From: Laetmonice hystrix | Taxonomy: Eukaryota | Reading direction: 5' to 3' | Length of the DNA stretch: 64,000 nucleotides | Assembly (NCBI GenBank): GCA_965235115.1 | Contig: OZ249444.1 | Coordinates: 18,848,001-18,912,000 of the forward strand | Shown here: positions 3,101 through 55,316 of the stretch, piece by piece | Layout of the letters: every line of letters starts with the position of its first letter | Numbering within the stretch: position 1 is the stretch's first letter | Made by a program: the position numbers and the translations under genes | Notes under the pieces: model-generated | What the model saw: only the letters and a program-made list of their open reading frames with translations | The model's database searches: none | Told to the model about the DNA's origin: nothing

Positions 3101-3468
3101 TACTATTTTAGAGCTTTAATCTTTCTGCGTATACTTATATTTCCCTGACTAATATATAATGAGCTTTCTTCATCATTCCATTACAGCAGCTGTTTTAGAC
3201 AAGACCTAAGAAGTGAAATTATGTCAGCCGTCTACTCCACGCTTAATGATTAGCTTCAATTAACTGTGGTTGCATTCATAGGTTAGAAATTAACATTAAT
3301 TGGGACCCTCATTACACTCAGATAGGCATCTTCATAGTGACAGTTAAATATAAATAACTATATACAGTCACTGCATCACGAGGAGATGTTTCATAATAAC
3401 CAATAAACAACCACCACTGTCAGCAACTGATGAAACCATTACGTCAGCAAACGGCTGAATCCTACAAG

Positions 3469-3578
3469 ATACAGGCGGCAGAACAACTAAATACAGGCGG
3501 CAGAACAACTAAATACAGGCGGCAGAACAACTAAATACAGGCGGCAGAACAACTAAATACAGGCGGCAGAACAACTAA
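3469..3578. repeat. 22-bp minisatellite, 5 perfect copies
   Basis: atacaggcggcagaacaactaa repeated head-to-tail with no spacers. Confidence 0.97.
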
Positions 3579-24400: not shown

Positions 24401-27305
24401 TGGTTATTGAGGGCCGTGATTCCCATGTCTGACCGGGAGGCGGTGACGGGTCGCGGCGCCCCGGCCGACCGCCGCCAACATGACTGACCCCGTCGTACAC
24501 ATCAGGCTCAGTCCCACCACCACAGTGGTCGTCACCGCTGCATGCTGATGTGGTATCGCTGTGGTTAGACCCCGCTGTTACCACTGTCACATACGATCCT
24601 AGCTCTACTTCACACACGTGATCAACAGTAAAATAAAGTAAACTTTCCTCCTTGTCAACTGCTGTTGGTAGCTGAGTGAACACACTTGCTGGACTACACT
24701 GGGCCAAAGTCTCACCGCGATTGTCCATGCCATTGCTTGTGAATGGGCATTCAGTGATGCAGGCCGGCTCCTTAAGTTGACTGCTCCATTCACACTCCTT
24801 ACTCACACCCCTTACTACAGCATCGTGGCCTTGAGTGACACTATCACTAAACGTATGTCCACAGATACCATCATCTATACTCGGCGCTTCACATCCATGC
24901 TTAAATCCACGCACATCTTGACAACCACCATTCCTAGTATCCACGGAGTTGTAGGGTCCCTGCGTGCAACAGTTTCCAGTGTTTAGCTCCTGTTGAGAGT
25001 TCCCTATGCAATGCCGTTTGTCCCAGCGCTCACGACTGTGATGTGTGGTGGTGTCTTGCCTCACTCCATGTGGCACGGTCGACTGACCCGCCGTCCACTC
25101 CCCCACTGCTACACGGCCTGCCGCCGCCTGGCCCCCACTGCCCGCGTGGTAGTGTTGGTGGTAGCTCCGTGCCTGTGACGACAGTGAGGATGATGACAGT
25201 TGTGGGCCGCTGAGAGTGCTGTCACCACCAGCGCTGTCATGGATGTGAAGGTCGAGACCGGCGAGGTGTGCTCCAGCAGAACTTTCTTGGCTGAGTGCAC
25301 ACGGAGCAGCAGCCAGTAGATCACTTGAAGGCACAGACGGGTAGTGACAGTTGGAAAACTTCCCATCCTGTTTCAGAGCCTGTGGCGAAAATGAATGATG
25401 AGGCAAGGCTGGGGGATTTGGATCAGGCCTGTTTTCACCACTAACATGAAACTGTCTTAGATCATCAAAGTGTTCACAAGGCTCAGCACATTTACATTGA
25501 GGTTTCGTCACGGAAGCACCATCATGACATGCAGAACTGTTACCACGGGCGTTATGCTGAACTAAACTTGTTGGGGTTCTGATGCTCACGTAATCACCAC
25601 TAGAATCTGACACCACTGTAGCTATACTTGGTAATCCGGTGGGCTTGAGCTGTTCCCCATCTTTTACCTCAACTCTCCCGGTATTAACGTCACTTATGTC
25701 TGCATCACATACAGCATCAGCACAAATGGCCGGGATGTTTAAAACATGTATTGTAGAGTTATCCGAGTTCACCGCCCTCTCCCCCTGCCCATCACCACAT
25801 ACACTGCTGACAGAGAGATTATCGGCCACTCCACAAGTGTCCTCACATCCAGGGGGTTGCTGCTGCCCATCACTCGTGGCTGCAGCCACCACCACACTGT
25901 CACAGTTCACAGGGCACTCCGATGTCACGTCCAAGCGGGCATTCTCAGCATGCCTAACCTGAGCCCCGGTTGGCTCATCAATGTTGTCCCTTGGTAGCGC
26001 ACCACCCAAGTCATCTGCAGCTGGCTGTACGTTGCAGCCAGCTCCACGAATAGAGAAGTTCTGTTGAGAGTCAAGTATGCTCTGCCTCACTGGAATGAAG
26101 CCAAAGGCACCAGTACTTAGGCCGCCATTTCCAGCATTTTTAACATTGTTATTCCTGGTATTTTTACTACTATGCTCATTGGAAGCACTTTGTGTTTTGA
26201 CTACGTCAGTCGTTGCCGTGTCAGCGCTCACTTCAATGTCTGTAGTGGAGGTGCCCTGGACACTTAGTTCAGCATCACGGCTCAAGTGCCCATCCTCCGG
26301 GTCTTCAGGCAAGGATAATACATGCTTAGCATCCTTAACATTTGGGGCTTTACCAACATCCCTTTCCACTTCACGTGTCCTATTTTTTGCTGACACATAA
26401 TTAACACTTTTTACACATGGTTTGGGGATTCCTCCATACCTCATGTTGGCAGTCGGAAGACAACTTACTTTGGTCACTTCCTTAGTAGTTTCAATTGATC
26501 TCTTATTATGTTCACACACATCCTTTGTTTTCTCTTTGCTGGGTTGGTCGTTTTCTGTGCCACAGCTGGGAATACTGTTCGGCTCTTGAGCCTTCCTGAG
26601 TGACCTTGGACTCAAAAAGAAAGTTTTTCTTTGCAGTTTTGAATTCGGCTTTGAATTAACCGTAGGCACTTTCGAAGTAGACTTGACTGCACTAGCTTTT
26701 GGAGACGTACCTGAAATATTGCTTGTACACACAGTGGGTGGGCAGGTTTGCGACAAAGTCTGTTCACCACCTTGATTAACACCGCCTGCATTTACACTAA
26801 CACTCTGAACACCTGATATACACTTTGCACTTTTCTTTGAATCAGATGTTTGCTTTCCATCTGTTTTAAACCCAGGTAAAAGTAGACTCCTAAACGGCTG
26901 TTTATGACATTTGGCTCCTGAGGAAGGGGCGGCTGTTTTTGTTTTTGAAGCTGCACTTGGGACTGCTACACCTTTAGATAATTTGTGTTCTTTCTTCACA
27001 CCTGAGTCACATTTCCCCTGATCAGATTTTTTTGTGCATGATTTAGGGGTACCTTTCTTTTCCCTACCTGAGCTAGTATGGGTGCCGGTGCCACCACCAA
27101 AGAGTTTTGCTTGCAACTCACGCACAATTCCGCCCCCACCTTTATCCGGGGGTGGGGGCAACTGTACTGGGGGTCCTGGGACCTCTTCGGGAACCGTTGT
27201 GTGTTTAACATTAGACTTATTGTCCTTCCTGTCCGTTTTCCGCCTTTTCATAAAGACATGCCGGCCAAATAACGGCAAGCGCGACTTTTTGGGTTCCTTT
27301 TCCAT
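15423..27305 (-). CDS. Giant 3960-aa low-complexity, probably intrinsically disordered scaffold-like protein; single uninterrupted ORF or giant exon
   Basis: 11,883-nt stop-free frame, far beyond chance, and more GC-rich than its flanks. The ATG is in a strong Kozak context (aacATGG) with an in-frame stop 5 codons upstream. S/P/T/K/R/E-rich with no recognisable globular domain. A possible donor AAG|GTATGC lies at 15435/15434, just before the stop. Confidence 0.9.
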   Translation of the reverse strand: MEKEPKKSRLPLFGRHVFMKRRKTDRKDNKSNVKHTTVPEEVPGPPVQLPPPPDKGGGGIVRELQAKLFGGGTGTHTSSGREKKGTPKSCTKKSDQGKCDSGVKKEHKLSKGVAVPSAASKTKTAAPSSGAKCHKQPFRSLLLPGFKTDGKQTSDSKKSAKCISGVQSVSVNAGGVNQGGEQTLSQTCPPTVCTSNISGTSPKASAVKSTSKVPTVNSKPNSKLQRKTFFLSPRSLRKAQEPNSIPSCGTENDQPSKEKTKDVCEHNKRSIETTKEVTKVSCLPTANMRYGGIPKPCVKSVNYVSAKNRTREVERDVGKAPNVKDAKHVLSLPEDPEDGHLSRDAELSVQGTSTTDIEVSADTATTDVVKTQSASNEHSSKNTRNNNVKNAGNGGLSTGAFGFIPVRQSILDSQQNFSIRGAGCNVQPAADDLGGALPRDNIDEPTGAQVRHAENARLDVTSECPVNCDSVVVAAATSDGQQQPPGCEDTCGVADNLSVSSVCGDGQGERAVNSDNSTIHVLNIPAICADAVCDADISDVNTGRVEVKDGEQLKPTGLPSIATVVSDSSGDYVSIRTPTSLVQHNARGNSSACHDGASVTKPQCKCAEPCEHFDDLRQFHVSGENRPDPNPPALPHHSFSPQALKQDGKFSNCHYPSVPSSDLLAAAPCALSQESSAGAHLAGLDLHIHDSAGGDSTLSGPQLSSSSLSSQARSYHQHYHAGSGGQAAAGRVAVGEWTAGQSTVPHGVRQDTTTHHSRERWDKRHCIGNSQQELNTGNCCTQGPYNSVDTRNGGCQDVRGFKHGCEAPSIDDGICGHTFSDSVTQGHDAVVRGVSKECEWSSQLKEPACITECPFTSNGMDNRGETLAQCSPASVFTQLPTAVDKEESLLYFTVDHVCEVELGSYVTVVTAGSNHSDTTSACSGDDHCGGGTEPDVYDGVSHVGGGRPGRRDPSPPPGQTWESRPSITMAEEGSTSSVDNNTHGKVTSSVATCTDHSSLLRAKVTEVDDNRTVLISGRTPAGPRKCSDKCDGQLSRPLCSQACDGSMKSPHSRASLIQFPDSAAPADISMSLGTAGKGRGSEGVKNDCVNLSHPPAGSVNTIVATVTSPCDIKPVMSHPHGISGHLKGEMLGKGDSQNDTGRRLRQPPGMLTTDTNHRIYDDVAVDGDESDEAEDVFNADIDARDDINESMTSSLPEFLLASQLEMCPRKGPPRSKSNDGEAGLSQGTLRLMNLKSVSSDERLYLRQGSALPVSGIQMKATNSSKHVRKVSASPVLQTVPSDEQKLVTASPVMSYRRTSASPVMTRSVSPLSPLSALPGLKWPLYSSPSCGIRMAELRAGFKRHTGPGCQTPSPSPSASPSPDGQFILSLPQSYSNTSLDAFEMRDQQQKRFSTASGSSQDSIQLELAAERRHSQPIMAHYVERRQTPTSAVVSPVMSSASNTSRSLTDVSPIYDLPPAEAETDSRRWTPVSPDSHIYETIDEVLTPDMYCSTDNKLYRRGVSWDGPVSDRLNQDQISTQDCSSSASSSSSLQRVGIANTNANKVRQQGRLWNPVSQTFSERDHTHGPDLYSSEELRYNGDSVDHVSSAGGKTEKFKGADHIYSELPIPDSRSAQQVKDLNGALTDVLGCETTSTNCSLSTNGDAVCLGATKRSIARPQGITGLYSRPVQPSRALSPLQKTGFASGDMHSSEPQLVICSQKQTSATNTELLTDSNCVSNLHCGSEGVLYQQQVFQGMDVQGEDMETADTLSEAGSEARDQLGQLPNTITKCDAAVQTPKSSLMRAAAEAKRNQRLRLMMMKNAGQSRRSPQRQLGPAPPQRQPDPSRLDGSGHGLRPRPHLLYRRPRVEDTMGASTCDEYEDYLKINTVQIPNAKSVVSGNNRVPDNRDPRVVGITAGDKQETVDTVPRDLSKEACGPGDPSVRGTGDTPEGSTQRQTGGEDRDTIMNTGVPHNDVNDDVALPADCQPHRNDQQCSVLNKQLSKIEVKKVTVKAKAVNTESEFSGSCDDSAGENDVEDDMTGKGTYVSLRTVSKKQSPHLKRQAHASPVLSHQRKMTSVKSARTKSTANRYLSLSLSSLSNSNSDLISSSSSEQDLNEKSHSSSRQRPVTSKLLRKGGKKHAGVVDERSSASRPEGKLKKHSGLMRGSAGVAGGYTGVTGGKRIIPSGRTTAAAGGLPPPLGNVASPSQSPSLPRKRDHAPSFLPSSTVTTKPKSRSRNAIKHPHRFAEGSVGPLTLSESDSSDTEVVSQRVRVRCDKKDKSAVGITQLAVVDINRHTDDIEDTDFIEATSAEVPHPGTHTKTDRYQTGTSHISQEKTSVIPRQCLNYSSVKKVKESCSATGSDGDLNSTGSTTPGITTCVAVPHRALPPTPPHPRSPSQSPYLPRRTLPQITEHSVRSQAETRIQNQPTEHVQGRVAGSAVPSRIVPPSPVSPRRSLPQPSRSQPASHPQSPHPSPASVRRGIPQSPGSPRRQLTTFKPAQSPNTVVPAPDVVPVSSEASSGPQARQSTSQSASVSKTAQSPLSSPSHAPSRLRYPDRSQQGQSKIGTPTSSRGATPERESALRSPANSQPSSPRRGVPKPKMNTNSDRDHQKPVPPPRGQSKLSSAASFATLTGAIKKLGSSARLNQGNKNVEVPAGPARRLPSERSSSGISAPKEQTSSGLEKSSSRNDRKPNGQKPASNITQPRILQRSLLPSSSKTDLTRASKSDLSRISEQRSTQSQSSAAGKGATKAYSSKRTGPQTENSQQSAEGSLKQSIPKPGLKQPSGLQKPRSTQGHANQNDLRSAQSTCPDVGHVRNNIRTNLKHSRTDIRSSKTDIRSSRSDLRSRTDVKSSRTVTSEANSTQVNNNCMKGTGRTVKDASVKADLKASNLSSSSVDLRAESVAVKVAERTAQSRIQVPIRRIASPGSSSSGIKRPTKPTLQSVKAKYEAIEMAASETSNTTAKTTERKSVKQPKEAQNKTLPVRSIPTKTSTTEDDYGKSKEPSSGASLSDLPNKLRKPYAGYNTYRSKLTYLRKPSQESSAKTDTAGSPPQPDVSKSDEDVSTKDTDPYTTCYDNDTVLVIECAPQQKPKIMQMSQQEAARKSTKSEEPACQPAAERRESEDALSAATEESESKGCGRSSRPASADLSEMSESFRQESMSNSAFDSGINSESSEESTHNFTMEDKKDVEAEKRDSRQSFLSSETDSSTTTEAPNRDSITPVASPTDDDGTTIGSSSENLQEETIDLLEENTEYECNMLRTDSEDTLTASELEAETEGHSKEREQCSPEDDVLRSAKYVDLEGGFHGLAIEDTTKKDKGLDCSLFMSNQILGTSISNTTVNKSKTLGASPKCVKNSSRMSSSAGQDSKVEGLKKAKSEETIKMEEYLNNLEDAELECFTSTSTITPDIMLSDDNLDLDGSDSHSAGPSQPESGSSITEKKDSQQIDSSLHVDVRHHGREPFSNPRIDSNSRSLLTPTCSEPSLRHEKVPEGDARKAQVSKGDKGQCDLGQVSSQAVESSKAEESILRRDSSQEGNFKTPPQSPGRCKSFLKRPQSLTGGQSNRKRCLASKMESPPTSGENESPIYVNGKPMFFVTSDAYEYYCDDMLEGIESRIIKDSSSDSMEEEPEHGDKDFLGKGLGCNPSGLSFGKNSKRLSASKPSRCSSSPDLERKSDPERRYSQNLSTSFLLDTSGLKRTTATSDLCLQGSEEEKEDKMFVKETAVSDSSIHTCTVDEESGQTDMEASAKCKRCEKEKRNGCSQIKIPTDLGSTSQQKVEPLNLATEQPSKGRDASSVENKHLPNHSESELEKSKSQRDKTSELNSPQVDVGKERQSNSTIVRKENCNTNNNVDTANKPQSALPVFRSRLPRVNKDSSGDTRAPQPNLNSLGTKDDKPKDTLATVKQHSAVILDNTIPRATTSRSRLVGVPIKSVGEGPRDATVSVVVDTMPHTQLRDTPKSPRIDEGYGTLQSTKVCT
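18789..18881 (-). repeat. Coding ~21-bp repeat within the giant ORF (SRTDIRS-SKTDIRS-SRSDLR-SRTDVKS-SRTV)
   Basis: Direct translation; units start TCA-AGA/AAA-ACN/AGT-GAT. Confidence 0.85.
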
Positions 27306-30300
27306 GTTTATAGAATACTGTATTCAGTACTTAACCAGTTTTGTATGTTCACTCAGCACATAAAACACATGTCGTGTAATAAGTTCACATAGACCACACT
27401 GGACATCAGCATTTTGCACACAGCTCGCCACTTAAGATATTTCTAATGTGAAATATTTCTAATGTGAAATCCTTAATGTGACAATACCAATATGAGCAGT
27501 ATATATGTACCGGATCAGCATACCATCAGGTTACCTTGTTCAGTTAGCTCCTAATTCAAGTGTTTCACCACATGAAACTATCCTCTCAGTAACTTCCTCC
27601 TTTGAAAAAATACATCCTCACCAGCCACACCAAAGTTGCATTAATATGCAGTTAAGCATGCTACCATATCCAAGATGGGCGACTTTAGGAAAGCACCTCA
27701 TGAACCATGGATATCAGTATGGATGAACTCGTAGGGATTCATACGTGACCCCTAAGCTCTTGAACCAACATTTGCCGATGTGAAACTGGATTCCAGTAGC
27801 TCTGCTTACAAAGAATTCACGATGGTTTATATCCGAACACGTATGAATGATCGCTCAGTGAAGTGGGTCACACCCATCCTAAGCTGCAAGTTCGCGTATG
27901 TAATACTGGCCTCACCGTTCTCACCGCTGTACAACACTATCTATACCATATCATCTAGACCCTTTCAAAACTAGCTTGTCTGAACTTGATGTACCATCCT
28001 CACAAACATACGTGATAGCATGGTCAAAGGCGGAGCAGTCCCTTTTTACCACAAGGATTTCTGTATTAATCAACCAGTCAAGTTCCATTCCACTTAATGC
28101 AATACCTTGATCCATCCGTCCCTCAACAAGCAGAGATAACGGGCTAGCTGTAAGGTTTCCATGTAGGTTTAGCAGTAAGTTTCCCCGGACCATCAGCAGC
28201 AGACCGCACGTGTACAAGTCACGTGTATTACATGAGGTCCTGATCAAAGGAATACCATAGTCGAGTCACAGCAGATGTTTACACGGGCATCTCTAGGCAA
28301 TGGTTAAAAAAACACTGTAAAATAACCACTATGATTTGGCTGAGCACTGTCGGATCTGTAGCCTGTGTACTGCAATGTTTAACCCCTTGTTCCTCTGTAG
28401 ACTGGAGACGGGGCTGGAGACAGATTACCGCTCTTACATCGCGATCATTACACTTTGTGTTCAACGCAAGGAAACTTTTGTTACAGTAGATTCAACAGAA
28501 CATTCTTCGAAAGATGCACTGACCCTGCACTTAAGTGACTTTCCGCTTGTTGTCGCGGGAGGCTGAGATGATTTAAGGCCCCCTTTAAGTCGTAACGTCT
28601 CAAGGACTACGTCATAAACACCTGTAGATGGCAACTCCTACGGATGACCTTCTTGTTGACAACCGGTTCCTTTTTTCTCCAGCGGGCACGTACCCTATAG
28701 ATCACCAATGGAAACCAAACAAACCAAAAGTTGTAAGGGTGACACTCTGTGGGGCTTCACCACCTGGCGCTTGTCAAGTGCACAATTCCCGCTGTTACCT
28801 CGTACAGTCACCCCCGAATTGCTCCAGTTGCTGGCAGGGTATCATATTGTAGGTTAAGCAGTCCCCTTTTGTGTGGCCCGGTCACAATATTGTCAACTTC
28901 AGAGTTATAAAGATCCCGAGTGTTTGAAGTTGGCGCCGCCGTTTGACTGTAGGGTTTGTGACCTCCAGTTGGAACTCGTCGATATTCACTGGAGAGGTTT
29001 ATGTGTCCTAACGAGTATTCCTGAGTCTATCCAACCAGTTTACTGCTTTCGTTAGCTTCTTTCCACTTTATGGTCCTCTTGAATGAAGGCACACTTGTCA
29101 CTCAGAAATGCGAAATTGCGACGATATTCACACATTTCCAGCGGATTTAAAGTTGCTCTTATTTATAGGTTAAGTATTAACGGATGTATCCTTACGTGCA
29201 GTCCTTGTGCTAATGCTATCCTCAATGTTGTCTGACCTTGTAAGGTTTTGCGATGGTCCTCTGTCGGCTGTTAACGCTGGAAGACCGATGATAAGTAAAT
29301 GATAAATGACCCTCTTTGCTAGCGATGTGATAAAAGTATAGAACTCTACCACTGTATCCTAGCAGGCCTGTGCGGGTCCACACCAGCGAATTGATTGGGT
29401 CGTGTATAATGTGGTCAATTAATATGGTCGCATGAAAATGAGGACTGAGAATATGTTGTTGGTGGACGTGCTGACACTGACTTCCATCCTTTTGAAAACA
29501 GATGATACTGGCCAAAGTCACAAGCTCAGTCTGCAGTCATTTCGAGAACACGCTCCACTTCCAAGCACACGTCCAGTGAAAGGTTGATGACTTGATGTTG
29601 TAAATGTAACTGCAATCCTGCGCACCTGTCTCACCAAATAGAGGGGATACTGGAGTTAGAGTCCTACCATTACAGTTCATGCATGACAGGGTGCAAACAG
29701 AAGGCCTATGTCCATTCAGCTCCTGTTAAATTTGAATTCCTCTTTGGTATTCACCTCCACAGCTGTGCTCTTGACTTACATCTCAGGATTCAGTAGGTAC
29801 ATATAAATATCATATACACACATGCCTTGCTGGTTGATGATGTGACTTCTGCTGCCATGCACACTTACGTCCTTCAGCCTCAGTTGGCTCTCCACGGCTA
29901 CTATATGCTGGCTGTTTGTATGTGACTCATGTAAGGAGCTTTCAGCCTGAATACCTTCTCACCTAAGGACAAGCGCTTGATACAGCCCTGATATTTGAAC
30001 TAGTTGGCTTGATCTCCCTCTGAACCCAGCACTGCTGGGTGGCCGAAGCGCAAAAGCAACACTTCCTTTAAACTCTTTGCTAGGTGTGCACTTTTTAACC
30101 GGAGCTCCCTTCCGGTTTCCATAAATTTGACATTTTTAGGGATGAATAACCATATCAGTCTGGATCCCCACGCTTCGCTCTGATATCGCTTGTCAGATTG
30201 GGACGAATAAAAAATGGCTCCTCACCGGATGAGGCGGGTAGATGAGTGTGGGAAAACGCTGCCGCTGGAGAATCATATTTATGTAAGACTCTCACTGTAA

Positions 30301-44039: not shown

Positions 44040-47000
44040 GACAAGGAGAAGCTGTGGGAATCAACATCACTCCCCAAAACCCCCATTAGGTAGGCCTACT
44101 AGGCCTAGGGCCTATATACGATTGCCTTCTGGCAGACCCTCCCCTGCAGTGGCAAGCCATCGAGGGTCGCCACAATATTTTTGCAGTTGTCGGTAGGCCT
44201 ATACTATAGGCCTAGGCATATTACACCGAACGCCTAGAAATTTCTGAAGAAAAGGGGACCCGGACCATTGTTCCATAGAGGATGCCAATGGATACGATAA
44301 CAAAATCTCACGAAATAGGCCTACTGTATTAGCCTAAGTAGACTCTATTAGGGGGCAGCGGTGTAGGCAGAACCGAGATAAGGCGGGGGGGGGGGGGGGC
44401 GGGTCCCAACCATATTAGTAATTCATTCAGATCTATTTAGTTATTGAATTATTTATTAATTATATTTTTGGGGGAGGGGGGGGGGGGGGGGGTCCAGGCA
44501 ACGCGGAAATCCCCTTGCACCACCCCGTACTTTATCAGTGAGCAATTATTGTTCAGTGGTTTCACGCCATCTTCACGGTAAAATCAAGGTCAGGCTATTG
44601 TAAAGTAGGACCCGTCCTTTATAAACTCAGGTAGGGCTAATGCCGTAGTGTAACCCCTATATTATGCCTGTAACACAACAATCCCATCGTCAGGTCAATT
44701 TCGGTCTTGGCTGAAGGTGGGGACTAGGTACTAAAATATGGACGTGAAAATTTTACTGAGGGCAGTATGTGGAGGTGCATAGAATAAATACATCATGTAG
44801 TAAAAGAACAATGATTTTATTCAAACAATTTTACAATGCGGCAGCTTTCTACAATACACACTAATACTTGAGGCATGACCTGCGTTAACGTAACCTCAGT
44901 TCCCATCTACGACACCAGGGGGCTGCTTTTGTTGGCAAGACAACAGTGCACTCTATAGTGCACCATTATTACACTACTTCACAGTACACTCAAGATAGAT
45001 ATCAGAAAGTCACTCACAGAAAGTCAAGCCCCAAAAAATCACTAATTCCTTTCTCCCGACATTTTCTCTGATGGAATGCTTTTTAGTAGACCGGTACTTT
45101 CTTCTGGAATAGTTTCCTTGCCACCAGTTTGCTGATATTTGAGTCAGACTTCCCCATTGAATGTTTTTACGACTAAGTACGCCTCCCTAAATAGTGCACG
45201 GATGAAGCAACACACAAGCAAATTTTTGTTGGATTAGCAAATATCTAAAACATTAAATACTCAAACTGGGGTATAAATCCACCTGGTGTCGCGGAGGGAA
45301 TGAGCTGGGTTGGAAACTCAGTCCGAAGGCCAGCTGTGGGTGAAAATAGAAAGGTACGATGCCCGTGGCAGCCTTCATACTAAAACACACATTATTACCA
45401 GTATTTTGCCTCACAACGTATGTTCCATTACGAAGCTCTCCAAGGAACAAACCTACCCGGTCTCTACCTCTCATGTTTTTCAACACGTAACGGAATCTCA
45501 ACCATCTTCTCAAGTTTCTGACCCAGAGAATGGAAACGGAGGCAACACTGAAGTGCTGGGACTGATATGAAATAAACAACTCCTGTTTGGAGCTGCACGA
45601 AATAAAATGATTGTTATATACGAGGTAATCATTTATGCACATGTATTCAGTGGGTTTCTGTGTGTTACTTATATTATGTACTGATCTGGTGGTGTTCTAT
45701 CACCATCAGCCTAGGCCCTTCACCACACATGCATACGCTAAATCCTAGTCATGCTCATTGTTAATTTGGTGATCAATACCAGCTCTACCTTGATCCTTAT
45801 TTTTTGCTTGGGCCTAACTCTTTTTTGTATTTTTGTGTGCACTGTAGAATTCACCTATGGTTAATTTCTCACTGATAAACCTGGTAACTCATATCTAAAA
45901 TCTTCACTTTGTGGTATGTACGTAATGATGCAATGCTCCAGATACCAGGGCTGGTAATCAACCAGCATGGTGTAGACACATCGTCTCAAACCTTTGGTGT
46001 CCCTAATGCATAGACGTTCATTCTCACATACCAGCAAGCAATCAACAATATCAATAAAAATCAATGTACAACGCTAAAAGTATCCACTACGCATCAATCG
46101 ATCAATCAATTAATCAATCAAAAGATGGCATTAAGTTACACTCAATGATTATTTCCCTGTAATAGTAAGACCAATAATGACATCTCTAACACACCTAGGT
46201 ATGACAAGTCAGGATTATGTATAACACGGTTTGTGTCCTCTTGCATATTGCTTGCAGTTCTTTAAACTTTTTTATTTGTAGTATTTTTTCCATTTTCTTA
46301 TCTTTTCTTTTATCTTTTTTTTCTGCAGGTGAGAAGTGACTGTAATTATGAAAGCAAATTGAAGGAGTTGATAATAGCAACTACTACTGGCCACAAACAA
46401 CATTTACAGATAGCAGACTGCCTGATCTATTCGGGTGGGACCATCTTCCGAGCTTCAGCCCAATACGTCTGGCAAGTGAGTTCCAGTCTACATAGAGGTG
46501 AAGCTCATACTGCACTTATATACAGGGCGATTTGTCTCCAATCAAACGGATTAACAATAATTTCCCCGTTTGTCTATGTGATAATCTTACACCACCAAAC
46601 GTCAGAGCCAAGCAACAACTTGATGACAAGCAATTAATCGACTTCCTGTCATTACATGATTCTGTAAAACCACAAATTGGTAGTATTCCTAAGAAGACGT
46701 CATTTAGTATCAGTATTGTTATTAGTATCTACATATTAGGCTAGCCAATTCCAAGCCATCGTTCATGTGGTCCACGACCTGTTTTACAATGCGAGGCACA
46801 CACTTTTCAGGGCCACCGGCGGCCTGCCTGGACAACTATCCCCAGAGAAACTCATCCGCACACTTGATCAGTATGATATGCAAGACGTCATGACAGGCCT
46901 TTCAAGCTAAGAACAAAGATAAGATGCTAAACTCTCACTGTGTCTGTATCTGGTCTAACATCTGGGTTGGTGCAAAAAAAGAACAATAAAAACGGTCTCA

Positions 47001-47976
47001 TATAAGAGAGCTGGCCAACGAGAAGAACGCCTGAGCAGCACCAGTGGCTGGATACACAGACCACACAAACGATGCCTTATAATAGGTGTTGTCTACAGGG
47101 TTACTCGTCTACGTTGTGTTCCGAACAGGCACCGCTACAGAGTACAGGATGACATTCAACTCTTCGGAAACGCAGAATAAGTTCACATACAACAATTCAA
47201 ACAATTAAAAAATCACAGCATTGGTGTGATTACCCCTAAAAACATGATGATGTGTTTTATTCTTTACAAACTATCAAAGTTATATGTGTATATATAAGTA
47301 TGTATATAGGAAAAGCTGTCACCCGTTCACTTGGAGTGGGTAGCATGTCTCTCTGATATTGAACACCTTGCCCTACAAGTTTTGACTGAGACTTTGGTTT
47401 GTTTCTGTTTCGCCATATAAATTTGAAAGTAGAGTTTCTGTGAGACATCCTACACCAGCATCCACATACATTCTTGTGGTAGGTACACACATAAAGCTGT
47501 TGGATGAACACACAAGAGAGAGAAAAGAAGAATATTTTACACCCATTCGTTGAGCATTACACTGTACAGTCCTTCCTATGTTGCATCGTATAGTATGTAA
47601 TGTTATGTTGGTCTCACACTAGTCGGACTTGACTGTAGGTGTTGCAATGTACATGTGGCCCACGTCTGCGGTGAATAACTAGCTGTACAAGAGAACGGGA
47701 ACCTGCCGACCTTCATTCAAACGTCAAACTCTCAGACACCGAGTGTGCCACATTATTTAAAATTCCCTATATGAAATCTTAGTTGCTGGATCTTTCATTG
47801 TTTATCTACATTTTATATCTATTAAACCCGTGATGTTAAAAGGGTTGTTGCTAAAAAAACAAATCTTGATTCCCAAGTGAGTGTTTAGTGTAGGAAAAGT
47901 TCAGTTTCCTTAACTCTGCACTGGGCGGCACTGCAGTTGATGAGTGTCCACTCCTGTGAGAAGTGAGTCCTCTACT

Positions 47977-48216
47977 CTAGTTAATGAGTATTTCGAAATG
48001 TGTGCTGCCAGCCTTGTCGTTCTTGTGATGGTAGATGTTATCTGCCCACACTTTGCACCATAACTGAAGGAGTTGGCCTTGGGTTGGGGTCTTGAAGCGG
48101 GCCATCACCAATGGGGCGCGGTATCCCTTCTGCTTCTGGTATGGGTAGAAAGCTTTTGGGAATCCACCTGGTGGGTAGAACTGGACCTGGCCAATGTTGT
48201 CCTCGGTGGCGTATTC
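47977..48216 (-). CDS. ATP1B: Na+/K+-ATPase beta subunit, alternative terminal exon B (EYATEDNIGQVQFYPPGGF...WCKVWADNI...EILIN*)
   Basis: Typical beta-subunit C-terminus (FYPY motif, PLV..RF, WCK.WA.NI); acceptor gttcttgcag|, phase 0, TAG stop. Confidence 0.92.
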   Translation of the reverse strand, partial: EYATEDNIGQVQFYPPGGFPKAFYPYQKQKGYRAPLVMARFKTPTQGQLLQLWCKVWADNIYHHKNDKAGSTHFEILIN

Positions 48217-48423
48217 CTGCAAGAACATACAAACCAAAATACAATACAGCTCTCCCACGGAATCATGGAACAGCGACCTTCGGATTGACCACATAATCTA
48301 ATGACTGCAGGTAATCCTCACGATGTCACATTTATTTATAAACATAGGGAACATCTCCTCTATCGTTTGGTACACTTCTCTGTACGTGTGATAGATAGCT
48401 TTCTTATATTGTAAAACCCTCAC

Positions 48424-48525
48424 CTCTCCCTCACATGAGACCGGCAAATGATCATCCGTCCACGAGTTGGCAATAATCTCTGGCTTAGTGTCATTGGAGT
48501 ACAGCTCGGGCTCCCATCCAAATAC
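48424..48525 (-). CDS. ATP1B: Na+/K+-ATPase beta subunit, alternative penultimate exon B (VFGWEPELY...PVSCEGE)
   Basis: 102 nt, phase 0/0; acceptor ttttcacgtttgcag| and donor GAG|gtgagg; carries the FGW.P motif and the conserved Cys. Confidence 0.92.
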
Positions 48526-50142
48526 CTGCAAACGTGAAAAATAAACAAATCTATCAATAAAATACACTTTAATATCCACTTATCACGAAACACTCGTTGT
48601 CCTAACAGCCATCATCCACTTTGTTGTCTATAATTTACTAAAAATAAGAACCACTAAGTTTTCCTTTTTTGTCACTTTCTGCAGGTGTCTGCTACCTGAC
48701 TTTAATATGCTATCCAACATGTAGTTCAGAAAGAAAATGAGGTATTTTCCAGACTTATACCAGTGACCACGTACTTAGTTCAAAACATACAAGACTTAAC
48801 GACCTATGGTACTGTTAATTCAACGTGAAAAAAGTTAAATTCTGAAATGTAACACTGAACACTCACAATGCTTTGGAATATAATGCCATTACCTTATCTG
48901 CGAACTACTGCGTCAGACTACTGTGTCAGTGCTCGGGAAAGTCTGACACATCATTACTGGCATAAATATTATGGTATCTGGTACATGTATTCTATTGCAA
49001 ATACAGTACATGTAATCAACATTGGCCAACATAAACTCTGCTGCATATCCAAACAAACAGAAACAGGGACAAGGGTTAACATAAATGTCAAAAGGACCAT
49101 GATTCACGACGCCATTTTCCCTTGTTTGTCCTGTTGATATCTGTCGCAAGGTAATTCAGTAGACTGTACAGAACAATGTTCACTTCATTTACAATTTATA
49201 ACACACTTTACATATATTATACGGGAAGAAATGGGGAAAAAAAATTATCAAATACTTTTATTGTTCACAGAAACAATTACATCAAAAACTTAAGTAACAT
49301 TGACAACTTCTGCTAAATGATAGTAAAACCTAAAACTTCACTGGGATGATTAAGTAATATTTACATACACACTGCATTTCCACCTGGTCTTATACCAGTG
49401 TATAGTGGAAACCTTTTATTCTACTGATACAAGATTCTACTTATACAATTTACTACTCCGATTGAGGTTCCTCTCCTTGGTACTGCAACTGACATCCACT
49501 TGGATGGATGGTTCTTGACAACATTATGTACATAGAATAACTTTCTCTGCCTTTCTTTCATTATTATACATCACTAATGCCTACTAGTTCTACCTCAGTA
49601 CGTCCACGTGCCTCATGTACATACACAACATCAATTCAGGCTTAGTTCGAGAATCACTTGGGTAAGAATAACTTCTAACCTCTTTACATATAATAGCAGA
49701 AAGATAACGAGCTCATTTTTAGCAATGTCATTTCAAATTCATCTTTTTTCTCTCTCTACTATTGGAACGGCTTTGTTATCTTGCACTATCTGAATGCAGC
49801 AAACAACAGCGTAGCCTTCATCACAACATGGATCTACTCTACAGCACATCAAAATAGTTATTTCATGTGAAAACTTATTTATTTTAAATCAACTTATCTT
49901 AAATGTTCCCTACATTATGGATACAAGTTACATTCACAACCAATGGGTTTCTCAGCTTTCAGTCCTCTATTTGCCGTTCACGGACCACCTTGGTTTTCGC
50001 CAGTATCCGACTTCATTGTTGTCCCATCACTCCCGTTTGTTCTACATTTATTTTTTCAGAGCTCAGAATAATCCTACCGTTTTCAAATTACACAATTGTA
50101 CAATCCCCACACTTTGTATGATCAGGGTGATGCTGAGTAATG

Positions 50143-50391
50143 TTAACTGCCCTCATGGACGTGGACTGTGAACCGCACGCTTCCTGCCTGGTCACGACGG
50201 TCATGGTAAATGTTGCTGGCCCATGCTTTGCACCAAACGCCGACATCTAAGTCCTTTGCAGTGTTGTTGAAGCGAACAGCCACAAGTGGAGGCAAGTACG
50301 CTTTCTTGTTCATGTATGGATAGAAGGCGGCGAGGAACCCTCCAGCAGGGTAGAACGTTATCGGACCTACTCTACCGTGATCCACAGTATA
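50143..50391 (-). CDS. ATP1B: Na+/K+-ATPase beta subunit, terminal exon A (YTVDHGRVGPITFYPAGGF...WCKAWASNI...HEGS*)
   Basis: Beta-subunit C-terminal motifs; acceptor ttattacag|, phase 0, TAA stop. Confidence 0.93.
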   Translation of the reverse strand, partial: YTVDHGRVGPITFYPAGGFLAAFYPYMNKKAYLPPLVAVRFNNTAKDLDVGVWCKAWASNIYHDRRDQAGSVRFTVHVHEGS

Positions 50392-50692
50392 CTGTAATAA
50401 ATATTTGTAAAAACTTCATAAAATAATAGATAAATTCTTTACTACTGCAACTAAACTACCCACTACCTTTCGGCTTGAACCATTTAAACAAATATGCATC
50501 TAGTTATTTGAAATGCATGGACAATACTGGGAACTCATTATGTACAGGAGTGACAAAAATTTATTTTACTAAAGGCAATTTCATTCTTAACTTGACGTGA
50601 TCTGTCCAACAAAAACACGAGTTTCAAGAAAACGTGAAATTGGGTATGTTATTTATGCTTATTTTCAACAGGAAATGAATCAGAAGACTTAC

Positions 50693-50794
50693 CGCTCCAC
50701 TGCAGGTGACAGGCACACTATCGTTGGTCACCAAAAAGTTTCCATCGGCAGGTTGGGTATCATTAGTGTACAGCACCGGTTCCCAGCCATAAAC
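50693..50794 (-). CDS. ATP1B: Na+/K+-ATPase beta subunit, penultimate exon A (VYGWEPVLY...PVTCSGA)
   Basis: 102 nt, phase 0/0; acceptor gtggcag| and donor GCG|gtaagt. Confidence 0.92.
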
Positions 50795-52396
50795 CTGCCA
50801 CACCATGTAAAAGAGACACCTATAACTTTCTGTCACGCATTTCTCTAAATCTTCATTAAAATTGTGAAGATAAATGAACGTAAATCAACATCAGACCGTC
50901 AACTTTAAATACAAGTGGAGGGTTTAGCTTAATGGGCCCAGAACAAACTGCCATAAAAATGAACTTAAAGCTACTGCAATCTGCATAAAAAGGGGTCTGC
51001 TAAATTATAAGAGTAGGCCTTTCAGAGCAAGGTAAATAATTGTACAATACAACACTTCCATACATCCCCTGAACCGGCTACACCAACACATACAAAGAAT
51101 AAAAAAACACGATCACATATCAAATGCATTACATGAAAAAGAATACCTATACAGTCGTGCCTTTTGTAAGTTTTTATAAACATCAGGATTGTTGATTCAT
51201 GAACCATATATTGTCTCTTGTAACTTGCTTTCAAAAACGCCACAGATACTACAGTATAATGTCCAAATCTGTCCATATTTAAAAGCCAATTTATTTTCTT
51301 TAAGAGGGTTATTTATGTTCATAATAGATCTCAAGGGAAAATAGTTTCTCAGATGTATTTTTCCAGAGTTATTATCAGATGAAATTTAACTCTTACTTAC
51401 CATTATACAAGTTGCCAGTTGTCTTTGAGGCTTCGCTTAAAACTTATCAATGATACTTCAACTTCTGTATGAATAATTCTTTATCCTATGCACGAAAATG
51501 GTATCCACTTATTCTTAATATTCCATATTCACCATCCATCTTCTCTGGCGGGGCAGCAACGAAAAAAAGGGCTGAACTCTGCAAACTAACTTCAACTCAC
51601 AATTTTACGGCCACTATGGATTTGCATGGTGTTTCCAATTTATGCTATCCTTATGTTACCAATGTAACTGTAATCTGTTCATTAACAGTTTTTCCTTATT
51701 AAGATCACACTCTTCGCTCAGAGAATCATGCAAATCCAAAGTTTTGTCTTCAAACCAAAAAAAAACAACCAAGAAACTCCATTGTCAAACAGTACAATTG
51801 TCCTCATCACAATAATCAGGATTCCTACCAACATACAAACAGTTAACTCGTCCATATCACAGGTATATACAAGGATTGGGTTCCCACTGGTCAGGTCGTC
51901 CTATTTCTGGCGTTATTGTTTTATTTTCTAGGCCAACTCAGCCATCCAGAGGTCAACAGAAGGGTCTGTATACATTTACGAGGGAGCAGTGAAGGGGCCA
52001 ACTGCAGAATACAGGTATAAAGAAAACAGTGTTTCTTGGGGCACTCTGAACGTATCGATAACCAAACTCATTTTGTAAGCCAATGGTGTGTGAGCTTGCA
52101 AAATAATGATTATGAATGAAGCCAAATTTTTAGCCCTCGATGGAAAAAAAAAAACCACTTGGCTTGCTCATTTGCCCAACTGACGGATTTTCTGACGATC
52201 AAACCCCATGGGAACCCTGCATATACAAGTCATGTTTTGAACACTTAACACCTTTTCCCGCCAAGGTGAAAAATGCATCTTGTGCACAACTTTCACCAGG
52301 TCTTCCTCCTGTTCCGTATTACTTGGCTGTTACTTTTGAGCATGGAGAAAGAACTGGCCTCATTTCACTTACAATTCTGCAATTTTTAGTACATAC

Positions 52397-52575
52397 CTTG
52401 TTCATTTTTAGTATAATGCATGGCTCTCCCTCATAGAATCCAAAATTATTTTCCTCCGTACACCAGTCCCCAAGCATGCCCATGTCAAACTTGCAGGGAT
52501 CCGTAGCACCTTCTGGTCGGCCATTACTGCAGTCAACTGTTGGACCTTCCTTATCAATAGCCTCTGATTTGTACA
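52397..52575 (-). CDS. ATP1B: Na+/K+-ATPase beta subunit, shared exon (VYKSEA...VDC...PCKF...WCTEENNFGFYEGEPCIILKMNK)
   Basis: Four conserved Cys and the hallmark N.FG....PCIILKMNK; acceptor tctttcag|, donor AAG|gtatgt, phase 1/0. Confidence 0.95.
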
Positions 52576-52743: not shown

Positions 52744-52854
52744 CTTTAAGAAAATCTTTCATGGAATCGATATACTCTTTAAAGGTGTCGGGTTGACCAG
52801 TCTTGAATTTTATCAGAGTGCTCTCGACATCAGGCATCGGCCGGAATCCAAGAC
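52744..52854 (-). CDS. ATP1B: Na+/K+-ATPase beta subunit, shared exon (GLGFRPMPDVESTLIKFKTGQPDTFKEYIDSMKDFLK)
   Basis: Hallmark (P)GLGFRP motif that follows the TM helix; acceptor tgttgtag|, donor AAG|gtaagt, phase 1/1. Not in the ORF track; translated by hand. Confidence 0.93.
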
Positions 52855-53379
52855 CTACAACATACAACATGAAAATATGAGTACAAAATCTACAACCTCC
52901 ATTTTGCAGAATAATAATACTATAATTGCTCTACTAACGTCCCCTTCACCCCTAAGCGTGAACATTCCAACGACATCTCCTCTATATTTATAATGAATGC
53001 GGATGAAGCTAAGTCAATGACACATTTTGAATCTAATCCACTACTTTTGACAATTTGTTGGAACCTCTCTCCCTCTTCCCCAATCCCATCCATATGGATA
53101 CTTTTAGTTTAGTAGCATTGTTAATGTCACTTTGAAAAAACCTTCACTTACTACCATAGAATTCAAAACATCTGATCACAGCCTGCATATGAATGTTTTA
53201 AAAAATTTACTACACCAAGGACAAGGGATATGTAGTCCACTGCACATATGAACTCGGAGTCAGATGTAGTTTAGTTCAAAAGAACTACAGTTACTTATAT
53301 ATATTTGGAGACGATTTCAAGAATCTTGAGAGGCACGGTATACCTGATCAGTATTCAGGGCAGGCGACAGCTGTGGAGT

Positions 53380-53404
53380 GGGGGGGGGGGGGGGGGGGGG
53401 GGGG
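53380..53404. repeat. G25 homopolymer in an ATP1B intron
   Basis: Direct reading. Confidence 0.9.
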
Positions 53405-55316
53405 AGGGGTGTCGGTGGACAGCCATCACAATTGCAGAGTTTACCTTTAGGATTTCAGACACACAACAATAGATACTATTCCTGGCCTCTGCCTGCCACT
53501 GTCAGCCCCCTGAAGGAGGTAACAACCATTCCTGTACTGTTTACTGACCTGATTGGGAGCTGACTGCTCCACAAATGCCGGTTATGCAACACAAATCCGT
53601 CCATTGGCAGGATCAACCCAAGGTCATGAAAAGGATTCGTGTGAAAGAGATTTCTACGTTTAGATGAGAAAGGTTCTTGCTCCAGCATAGATTGGAAAGA
53701 GGGCACAATTATTGTTAGGCATATATAGGCAGAGTTGTGTTGAGAAAGATTTAAAATGCTTCCTTCAACCCCTGCAATGGTAGCTGGTCCCATTGAGGGT
53801 TGGGGAAAGTATGCCGTTCTGTATCTGATGGATGAATACATGGCCCCATTATTGGTGTGCCTGCTATGGCTTCAGCCACCACCACCACCAGCTGCATCAA
53901 ACTAAATTTACCAGATGGCCAAGAAGGCAATCAATAAATCAACATCGACTGCTGCTACGGTCCAGGATGTGAGGGGCGCTGGCTGGAGGAGGGTGGGGGT
54001 GTATCCTGACTAAGGAACCGGCTCACACGATCGTCACCCCACCTGGCGGGCACAATCCACCTCACCTCAGGCCCAGCGGCCACACGACCGGCCCCACCTA
54101 CCACTTCACCCACCGTCTCAATGGCCAGTGTTTGTGTCTTGTAAAGGAAATCTTTACAGGTCAACTACTTTTTGATAATATGAAAGTATTAATGGGGTTT
54201 CCCCTCAGTAAATCTATGGGGAAAAATGAATCCATGACTTGCAGGCTTCAGAGATTGGCCATTTTGAACCATAAACCTAAAAATAACGAGATTTTGGAGA
54301 AAATGAAAAAGATGCTTGCCAAATTTGTGTGAAATTCACTTTTTCGAATTTCCATGACCAGGGCAAACCATACCACGGCCACATATTTGTAAATTAGATA
54401 TCCATCTCCCCCCCCCCCTACCAATCACTCGGTGGTAGCGTTAGAGGCTGGTACCACTGACAGCCATACCAATTACGCAAAGTGGAAGCCTGGGTCAGAA
54501 TTTGCCTTGTTTACTGGCCAGCAACTACATACAGGCTTCGCTACGGTTTGCAGTTTGCCCGAGGCATCGAAAAAATGGATGAACTTCGGCCTTTTAACAT
54601 GCATACTGGCAGGCAATGTTGTAATATCTCGTCAAATGCCAGTACATGGGCCTTTTCAGTGCAAACTTACCGGTAAAGAATCTCTGACTACAACCTATTC
54701 CATAAACTACAGGACCGATTTAGTAGATCCGCACATGGTAAGACAGTAAAGAAAAGAAAAGGAAAAAAAATGGCCAGCATTATCAACAAACACGCATCTA
54801 ACCATCACTATATCAGTATGCTTTCATCATCTAGGTTTGAAGAGCAACTGAGAGAATATTGCTAGATGAAACCGACATTTGTAATAGAGTTAGTGGCGAG
54901 ATTGGGTCTCACTGATCCAATAAATCATCACACCCAGGCTCACAGAGTCTTCAGACCTAGCCAGAAGCTGGCATGGCCGTCAGAGCTGACATTGGCAAGG
55001 TCACAATGCTGGGGTGGTCAACCAAAGCCAAAAATGTGATCAACTGCAGATCTAAAGCAGCTCCAAACTCAATTGTTTTTTTTTTTTTGGGGGGGGGGGG
55101 GGGGGTGTAATCAACACTCCTATTCAGTGTATTTTCCTGAACACCTTAACAACTTGCATTACAGCAGATTAGTGAATACAAAGTTGTTTTTCAGTCTAGG
55201 TATCTTACTAACTTCTTCTATCCCTCATGACAGATACCATTTAGCATTTGTCAAACTTAGGACTCAATTATAGCCTGCACCAAAGTAGCATCCGGTAAAA
55301 AATACTTTGGACTTCA

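What the first reader, a model, noticed from the sequence alone, without database searches (positions are those of the whole stretch)
47977..50794. Na+/K+-ATPase beta gene with two intact tandem copies of its last two exons: a candidate swappable ectodomain
Seen: after the shared exon ending ...ILKMNK (52397, phase 0) come two exon pairs, A (50693-50794 + 50143-50391) and B (48424-48525 + 47977-48216). The penultimate exons are both exactly 102 nt and phase 0/0. The pairs align without gaps at 17/34 and 33/79 aa identity, and all splice sites and reading frames are intact. Each pair keeps both Cys of the third disulfide plus the FYPY motif. I found no 5' beta exons in the 1.6 kb between the pairs. 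Each terminal exon has downstream AATAAA signals (A: 49878, 49415, 49257; B: 47256). Established: the beta ectodomain governs alpha-subunit assembly, K+ affinity and cell adhesion, and vertebrates diversify it with separate paralogous genes. Inference: one gene makes two beta isoforms by alternative last-exon-pair/polyadenylation choice, an intragenic alternative to gene duplication kept under purifying selection.
Basis: partly seen in the sequence, partly recalled or inferred. Interest (0 to 1): 0.8.

Follow-up and report, generated by a model that had tools for sequence, protein, structure and literature searches.

The report
Sodium-pump beta gene, two alternative ends
One sodium-pump beta-subunit gene of an invertebrate carries its last two exons twice in tandem, and RNA from the same animal shows both copies spliced onto the shared front of the gene, so one gene makes two proteins that differ in the outer half of their extracellular domain.

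Summary
On the minus strand, two intact exon pairs follow the shared exon that ends at 52397: A (50794-50693 and 50391-50143) and B (48525-48424 and 48216-47977). They are 17/34 and 33/79 amino acids identical. All splice sites are canonical, and both terminal exons match Pfam PF00287.

One run from the assembly's own sample behaves as RNA. Its contigs hold the joints 52397>50794, 50693>50391, 52397>48525 and 48424>48216. The three DNA runs of that sample hold none of them.

The gene has four shared exons, two of them upstream of the window. It yields isoforms of 305 aa (A) and 302 aa (B) with 189 aa in common. By contig depth, A looks like the major form in that library.

Both modules keep almost all family-invariant residues (21/21 and 20/21), and synonymous sites are saturated. 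The duplication is therefore old and both copies are constrained.

Not shown: protein products, regulation, functional difference, or the same layout in another species. One annelid homologue has a single pair.

Alternative duplicated terminal exons are a known mechanism. I found no report of it for a pump beta subunit.

The parts
52744..52854 (-). Shared exon 3 (phase 1 to 1), start of the ectodomain: GLGFRPMPDVESTLIKFK...
   Evidence: Pfam PF00287 positions 76-112. RNA joint 52744>52575. The loose end at 52855 equals the end of the transmembrane exon, which lies outside the window.
52397..52575 (-). Shared exon 4, with four Cys (two disulfides), ending ...ILKMNK in phase 0. This is the branch point for both alternative pairs.
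   Evidence: Pfam positions 137-180. Joints from 52397 to 50794 and to 48525.
50693..50794 (-). Exon 5A, 102 nt, phase 0/0: VYGWEPVLYTNDTQPADGNFLVTNDSVPVTCSGA, with two N-glycosylation sequons.
   Evidence: Joints 52397>50794 and 50693>50391, contig depth 1918.
50143..50391 (-). Exon 6A coding part (82 aa plus stop), with one sequon (NNT).
   Evidence: Pfam E 4.6e-15. Best solved relative is 8k1l_B, E 4.1e-16. RNA contig.
49377..50142 (-). 3' UTR of isoform A as covered by the RNA contig. The contig stops about 35-38 nt after the AATAAA at 49420-49415.
   Evidence: record 10. Contig ends are only suggestive of a poly(A) site.
48424..48525 (-). Exon 5B, 102 nt, phase 0/0: VFGWEPELYSNDTKPEIIANSWTDDHLPVSCEGE, with one sequon.
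   Evidence: Joint 52397>48525 (depth 92; 24 letters plus 6 ambiguous on the short side) and joint 48424>48216 (depth 257).
47977..48216 (-). Exon 6B coding part (79 aa plus stop).
   Evidence: Pfam E 3e-15. 64% identical to the C-terminus of a spliced transcript of another species (P0001/L015).
45807..47976 (-). 3' UTR of isoform B. 47001-47976 is covered by the RNA contig. The contig holds 1,194 further letters beyond the stretch laid, so the lower bound of about 45807 is inferred.
   Evidence: record 8 (2,515 nt; record positions 1195-2410 equal 47001-48215). AATAAA at 47261-47256 and 46276-46271.
48526..49376 (-). Spacer between the end of the A contig and exon 5B. It is intron for the B isoform and is covered at low depth by unspliced RNA.
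   Evidence: record 9 (48498-49212, depth about 20). No beta-like exon here.

Best explanation
This is a single Na+/K+-ATPase beta-subunit gene of about 35 kb on the minus strand. It has four shared exons. Exon 1 (start codon) lies at window-equivalent 81320-81185 and exon 2 (membrane anchor) at 67179-67039; both are outside the window. Exons 3 and 4 are in the window. After them come two tandem, homologous, mutually exclusive pairs of terminal exons. The donor at 52397 is joined either to the proximal acceptor at 50794 or to the distal acceptor at 48525. The proximal choice gives exons 5A-6A, with the transcript ending near 49380. The distal choice skips the whole A pair with its poly(A) site and uses exons 5B-6B with a 3' UTR longer than 2 kb. 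The products are type II membrane glycoproteins of 305 aa (A) and 302 aa (B). They share the cytoplasmic tail, the membrane anchor and the first half of the ectodomain with two disulfides (189 aa). They differ at 56% of positions in the C-terminal 116/113 residues, which carry the third disulfide and correspond to about residue 187 to the end of pig beta-1. A has three N-glycosylation sequons in this module and B has one; B is more acidic. Shown: the exons, the junctions, transcription of both forms, and sequence constraint on both. Inferred: both are translated, assemble with the alpha subunit, and give pumps or cell contacts with different properties.
For: The gene model rests on the six-frame Pfam scan, tblastn and reading of the splice sites. 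RNA-like contigs of run X4 hold five GT..AG joints exactly at the predicted borders, including both branches from 52397. A loose end at 52855 equals the end of exon 2. DNA runs X1-X3 of the same sample hold none of these joints. The short sides of the two branch joints (29+4 and 24+6 letters) are what k=31 graph contigs give when two paths leave one shared exon. No A-to-B joint was seen. Constraint is shown by several measures. Family-invariant columns are kept 14/14 and 13/14 at >=90% conservation, and 21/21 and 20/21 at >=80%. dN is 0.47 with saturated dS. Third codon positions are 43% identical against 61-65% for the first two. The B module is 56-58% identical to the ends of homologues whose front halves resemble the shared exons (L015, P0151, P0153), so it is not a decaying relic. 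The six ectodomain Cys are kept in both isoforms.
Against: The RNA evidence is one run of unrecorded kind, read as assembled contigs, from one sample and an unknown tissue. The joint to B has only 24 unambiguous letters on its short side and a depth about 20-fold below the joint to A. No protein evidence exists. No second species with both pairs was found: an annelid homologue (Ridgeia piscesae) with the same six-exon layout has one pair only, and protein searches found no A-type partner elsewhere. Any functional difference between the isoforms is inference.
Confidence: 0.85

Rival explanations
1. The B isoform is tolerated read-through and splicing noise. Pair B is the former end of the gene, displaced by pair A, still spliced at a low level but without a role of its own.
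For: In the one RNA-like run, the joint to B has depth 92 against 1918 for A, and the B contig 257 against 1918. No relative with both pairs was found.
Against: B keeps 20 of 21 family-invariant residues, an open frame and all splice sites, although synonymous sites between A and B are saturated. B is closer than A to homologues of other species. Its internal intron is removed efficiently (depth 257 spliced against about 19 unspliced). Contig depth is a poor measure of expression, and only one library was read.
Confidence: 0.08
2. Pair B belongs to a separate downstream beta gene with its own promoter and 5' exons, and the exon 4 to 5B joint is a read-through chimera.
For: An unspliced RNA contig covers 48498-49212 just upstream of exon 5B. 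It could in principle be a first exon.
Against: No sequence resembling beta exons 1-4 lies between 50143 and 48525 or anywhere else in window-equivalent positions 1-74000 apart from the shared exons. A transcript starting in the spacer would lack the membrane anchor. The only joint into 48525 comes from 52397.
Confidence: 0.03
3. The joints are not RNA splicing at all. Run X4 would then contain DNA of processed copies or contaminating cDNA, or the contigs are mis-assembled.
For: The run's kind is not on record.
Against: There are five joints, all with GT..AG ends and all at predicted exon borders. Depth falls from up to 1918 over exons to 0-20 in the four introns removed. The three DNA runs of the same sample span the locus unspliced. 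The genome scan found no processed copy of this gene; the intronless beta genes on C8 and C12 are only 30-47% identical.
Confidence: 0.02

Closest known systems
Alternative tandem-duplicated 3'-terminal exon clusters, e.g. Drosophila PGRP-LC and pip (reviewed in PMC9013439)
   Same: Homologous 3' exon groups in tandem are chosen one at a time. By my own knowledge, in PGRP-LC a common cytoplasmic and transmembrane part of a type II membrane protein is joined to alternative extracellular modules.
   Different: Here there are two choices, each of two exons. They replace half of one fold rather than a whole autonomous domain. No competing RNA structure that could govern the choice was evident.
Tandem duplicated exon substitution (mutually exclusive homologous exons) in ion-channel, tropomyosin and other genes (PMC9741552, PMC8373072)
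   Same: An old duplication, equal exon length and phase, and isoforms identical except for a homologous segment, with both copies under constraint.
   Different: The classical cases swap one internal exon and keep one poly(A) site. Here a two-exon terminal unit with its own stop codon and 3' UTR is swapped, so the choice is tied to the choice of transcript end.
Beta-subunit diversity through separate genes: vertebrate ATP1B1-3, insect nervana 1-3 (PMC9862990)
   Same: The outcome is the same: several beta subunits with different ectodomains available to one alpha subunit. This genome also has at least five other beta-like loci.
   Different: Those isoforms come from separate genes that differ along their whole length and have separate promoters. 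Here the two forms share promoter, tail, anchor and the first half of the ectodomain.
Laboratory chimeras between Na,K- and H,K-ATPase beta subunits (PMC2290884)
   Same: Exchanging the extracellular part while keeping the N-terminus and membrane anchor. In that work this changed ER retention and the apparent K+ affinity of the pump.
   Different: Those chimeras swap the entire ectodomain between distant paralogues in vitro. Here nature swaps only the part from the equivalent of about residue 187 onward.

Membership tests
Na+/K+-ATPase beta subunit (Pfam PF00287) | Significant match to the family profile | tested here: met
   Exons 3, 4, 6A and 6B match profile positions 76-112, 137-180, 210-284 and 208-284. 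The terminal exons score 55.9 and 56.5 bits against a cut-off of 23.3. Exon 2 matches positions 32-75.
Na+/K+-ATPase beta subunit (Pfam PF00287) | Type II topology: short N-terminal tail, one membrane anchor, large C-terminal ectodomain | tested here: met
   The spliced model has a tail of about 47 residues, then the hydrophobic run ITGFYLVYYALLAAFCAIMMTIFFTTI, then about 230 residues. This is read from the sequence; no topology predictor was run.
Na+/K+-ATPase beta subunit (Pfam PF00287) | Six conserved ectodomain cysteines (three disulfides) | tested here: met
   Cys at 145, 157, 168 and 182 are shared, and Cys at 220 and 277 are in both modules. They align with the conserved Cys columns of 81 homologues. 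The bonds themselves were not tested.
Na+/K+-ATPase beta subunit (Pfam PF00287) | Assembly with a P-type ATPase alpha subunit | not testable with these tools
   Needs co-expression or co-purification.
Alternative tandem-duplicated terminal exons | Homologous exon units adjacent in one gene, with equal phase and matching length | tested here: met
   102/102 nt and 249/240 nt, all phase 0, 44% amino-acid identity, lying 2.2 kb apart.
Alternative tandem-duplicated terminal exons | Each unit joined to the same upstream exon in transcripts, and never to the other unit | tested here: met
   Joints 52397>50794 and 52397>48525 are present and no joint between A and B exons was listed. Caveat: contigs drop rare variants, and this is one library.
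Alternative tandem-duplicated terminal exons | Separate transcript ends for each unit | tested here: inconclusive
   The A contig stops at 49377, after the AATAAA at 49420-49415. The B contig runs on past 47001 for 1,194 letters. Contigs cannot fix RNA ends.
Alternative tandem-duplicated terminal exons | Arrangement conserved in related species | tested here: inconclusive
   The Ridgeia piscesae homologue has the same six exons but one pair, and its orthology is doubtful (39% identity in the shared exons). The closest transcript, L015, has a B-type end only. No closer genome could be reached.

The most novel reading that the evidence does not exclude
The two exon pairs are an old, regulated switch. 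By choosing the proximal or distal terminal pair, the animal changes the outer half of the beta ectodomain (glycan number, charge, third disulfide loop). This would retune the pump's K+ activation, its surface delivery or beta-beta cell adhesion by tissue or salinity. It would be a splice-encoded equivalent of the vertebrate beta-1/beta-2/beta-3 paralogues, and a natural half-domain chimera that maps which beta properties reside after residue ~187.
Probability: 0.35. Interest if true: 0.6.

Novelty: new member of a known kind. Interest (0 to 1): 0.42.

Why it matters
Beta subunits decide whether the sodium pump folds and reaches the cell surface. They also set how strongly it binds K+, and they act as adhesion molecules. 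Textbook diversity of beta subunits comes from separate genes. Here one gene delivers two versions that are identical up to the middle of the ectodomain and then diverge by 56%, with both versions transcribed and both constrained. This is a ready-made natural chimera pair for asking which pump and adhesion properties depend on the C-terminal half of the ectodomain. It also shows that annotation of invertebrate pump genes should look for alternative terminal exon pairs. The mechanism itself is ordinary, so the value is specific to the gene family rather than conceptual.

Tried and rejected
- **Sequencing-run searches:** neither listed a run recorded as RNA. Run X4 (kind unknown, 59 million letters) proved RNA-like only when laid on the locus.
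- **Protein search with exon 6A alone:** no candidate was found. The length rule excludes full-length proteins, so this says nothing about whether A-type ends exist elsewhere.
- **Searches with P0001 and with the N-terminal 189 residues of the L015 protein:** only B-type or more distant beta subunits were found, with no pair of isoforms sharing a front half. This is inconclusive.
- **Dating the duplication:** the free tree puts B with L015 (99/82) and A outside. The AU test does not reject A and B as sisters (p = 0.40). So it is unresolved whether the duplication is older than that species split or A simply evolved faster.
- **dN/dS:** dS is saturated (2.9 or undefined), so no ratio can be given.
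- **DNA-level repeats:** only a 57-nt core of the terminal exons is still 70% alike, and there is no intron similarity.
- **Long-range inverted repeats:** none link the intron after exon 4 to the B acceptor. Two short AT-rich nested pairs around the 6A acceptor could be chance.
- **Literature:** I found no report of C-terminal alternative splicing of a Na,K-ATPase beta subunit. The library is incomplete, so this is not proof of absence.
- **Earlier findings of this scan:** nothing relevant.
- **Structure and complex prediction of the two spliced isoforms:** not run.

Full report
**What is in the sequence.**
- The two penultimate exons are each 102 nt, phase 0/0, and 17/34 identical. Over both exons the pairs share 50 of 113 aligned residues.
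- Every acceptor ends in AG behind a pyrimidine-rich tract and every donor starts with GT.
- Both terminal exons match the Na_K-ATPase beta profile PF00287 over its last ~75 positions, with E 4.6e-15 and 3e-15. The two exons upstream in the window match positions 76-112 and 137-180.

**The whole gene.**
- The window is C10:18848001-18912000 of a 627-Mb assembly.
- The six-frame Pfam scan placed the membrane-anchor exon 3 kb beyond the window's end. I read it at window-equivalent 67179-67039.
- A spliced transcript of another species (L015, below) located exon 1, with the start codon, at 81320-81185.
- The model is therefore: exon 1, exon 2 (anchor), exon 3 (52854-52744), exon 4 (52575-52397), then 5A-6A or 5B-6B.
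- It gives in-frame proteins of 305 and 302 residues with 189 in common.
- tblastn with an intronless paralogue over window-equivalent 1-74000 found no other beta-like exon. In particular, no copies of exons 1-4 lie between the pairs.

**Transcripts.**
- No run on record as RNA holds the locus. Of the four runs from the sample that also gave the DNA, however, the small one (X4) behaves as RNA.
- X4 contigs show five joints with GT..AG ends: 52744>52575, 52397>50794, 50693>50391, 52397>48525 and 48424>48216. These are exactly the predicted exon borders.
- Contig depth is about 1,200-1,900 over exons 4, 5A and 6A, 257 over 5B-6B and its UTR, and 0-20 in the four introns that are removed (about 350 in the two bins that also hold exon 3).
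- Contigs of the three DNA runs cross the region unspliced.
- A loose end at 52855 equals the end of exon 2, which confirms that junction too.
- The two joints leaving 52397 have short sides of 29 and 24 letters. This is what k=31 graph contigs give when two paths diverge from a shared exon, and 24 letters next to an exact splice border cannot be chance.
- No joint between A and B exons was listed.
- The A contig stops at 49377, shortly after the AATAAA at 49420-49415.
- By contig depth, A exceeds B about 7- to 20-fold in this library. The tool warns that such depths are a poor measure of expression.

**Constraint and age.**
- I aligned 81 beta subunits from the protein searches and from this genome.
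- A keeps 21 of 21 and B keeps 20 of 21 of the columns that are at least 80% conserved. At 90% conservation the counts are 14/14 and 13/14.
- Between A and B, dN is about 0.47 and dS is saturated. Identity by codon position is 61/65/43%.
- Only 0.7% of simulated neutral copies at this divergence remain open.
- At the DNA level only a 57-nt core is still recognisably alike.
- The duplication is therefore old and both copies have been kept functional.
- B is the more conventional end. It is 56-58% identical to L015, P0151 and P0153, whose front halves also resemble the shared exons. A reaches at most 50%, to a Ridgeia piscesae protein.
- The tree joins B with L015 (99/82) and leaves A outside. 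The AU test does not reject A and B as sisters (p = 0.40).

**Relatives.**
- L015 is a 1,237-nt contig from another species' run. It holds a full 301-codon reading frame with a B-type end and no introns, so it is a transcript.
- The Ridgeia gene has the same six-exon layout and identical exon borders. It has only one terminal pair, and the next gene follows within 4 kb.
- Searches for an A-type partner in other species found nothing.
- This genome also has other beta loci, each with a single terminal exon match. They comprise two intronless loci (C8, C12), twin multi-exon loci on C10, and one on C19.

**What differs between the isoforms.**
- The swapped module starts right after ...ILKMNK. By alignment to solved structures, the terminal exon corresponds to residues ~220-303 of pig beta-1. 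The penultimate exon then corresponds to about 187-219.
- The first two disulfides are shared and the third lies in the module.
- Module A has three N-glycosylation sequons (N200, N213, N265) and a net charge of about -1. Module B has one sequon (N200) and a net charge of about -4.
- Ectodomain exchange between beta subunits is known to alter ER retention and apparent K+ affinity (PMC2290884). By my own recollection, segments of this half of beta-1 take part in beta-beta adhesion. I did not check that here.

**Mechanism proposed.**
- Shown: one promoter, four common exons and two alternative terminal units.
- Inferred: the choice is a competition between two events. One is splicing of the exon 4 donor to the proximal acceptor, whose pyrimidine tract is interrupted by purines, followed by cleavage at the A poly(A) site. 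The other is continued transcription and splicing to the distal acceptor, which has a cleaner tract.
- Unspliced RNA across 48498-49212 at a depth of about 20 fits transcription through the A end.
- No selector-type RNA pairing was evident.

**Comparison with what is known.**
- Mutually exclusive use of tandem-duplicated terminal exons is described for Drosophila pip and PGRP-LC (PMC9013439). Tandem duplicated exon substitutions are typically old and functionally important (PMC9741552).
- Beta-subunit diversity is described as coming from separate genes (PMC9862990).
- I found no report of this arrangement for a pump beta subunit.
- I therefore file it as a new member of a known kind. It is well supported at the transcript level and of moderate interest.

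Noticed in passing
window 15426-27323 (-): A single open frame of 3,965 codons (11.9 kb) starting MEKEPKK.... It is serine-rich (14% S), looks disordered and has no Pfam match. It is probably one giant exon of the neighbouring gene.
   Followed up: partly
L003/L007/L011 (C10:11263901-11265606, +) and L004/L008/L010 (C10:15729025-15730755, -): Two beta-subunit loci 4.5 Mb apart on the same chromosome, in opposite orientation, give identical translated exons in tblastn. This is either a recent inverted segmental duplication or an assembly duplicate. Each has a single terminal exon pair.
   Followed up: partly
L001 1444-2358 (+) (C8) and L002 about 1261-2169 (-) (C12): Two intronless beta-subunit genes. 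The C8 copy is a complete 305-aa frame (Pfam E 1e-60). The C12 copy is very divergent (longest branch in the tree). Both look like retrogenes.
   Followed up: partly
L002 about 2554-3584 (-): An array of some 18 or more tandem 51-nt units, open in two frames (unit SSYVRPTCHIGAYVLLE), lies next to the C12 beta-like gene.
   Followed up: no
window 50377: In one DNA run (X1) the contig carries C instead of G. This changes codon 5 of exon 6A from His to Gln. It is the only coding difference among 18 single-letter differences in the 6 kb laid.
   Followed up: partly
window 50384-50416 with 51168-51262: Two nested 16-nt inverted-repeat pairs (88% complementary, AT-rich) join the acceptor region of exon 6A to the intron upstream of exon 5A. 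They could mask that acceptor or could be chance.
   Followed up: no
window about 53340-53420: A long G run on the + strand (translated as a stretch of 8-10 Gly in several frames) lies in the 14-kb intron upstream of exon 3.
   Followed up: no
L015 1-1237: The gene call on this transcript contig starts at an internal Met (203 aa), but the frame is open from an upstream MASTEIDF... start, giving a full 301-aa beta subunit. The database protein P0001 is therefore N-terminally truncated.
   Followed up: yes
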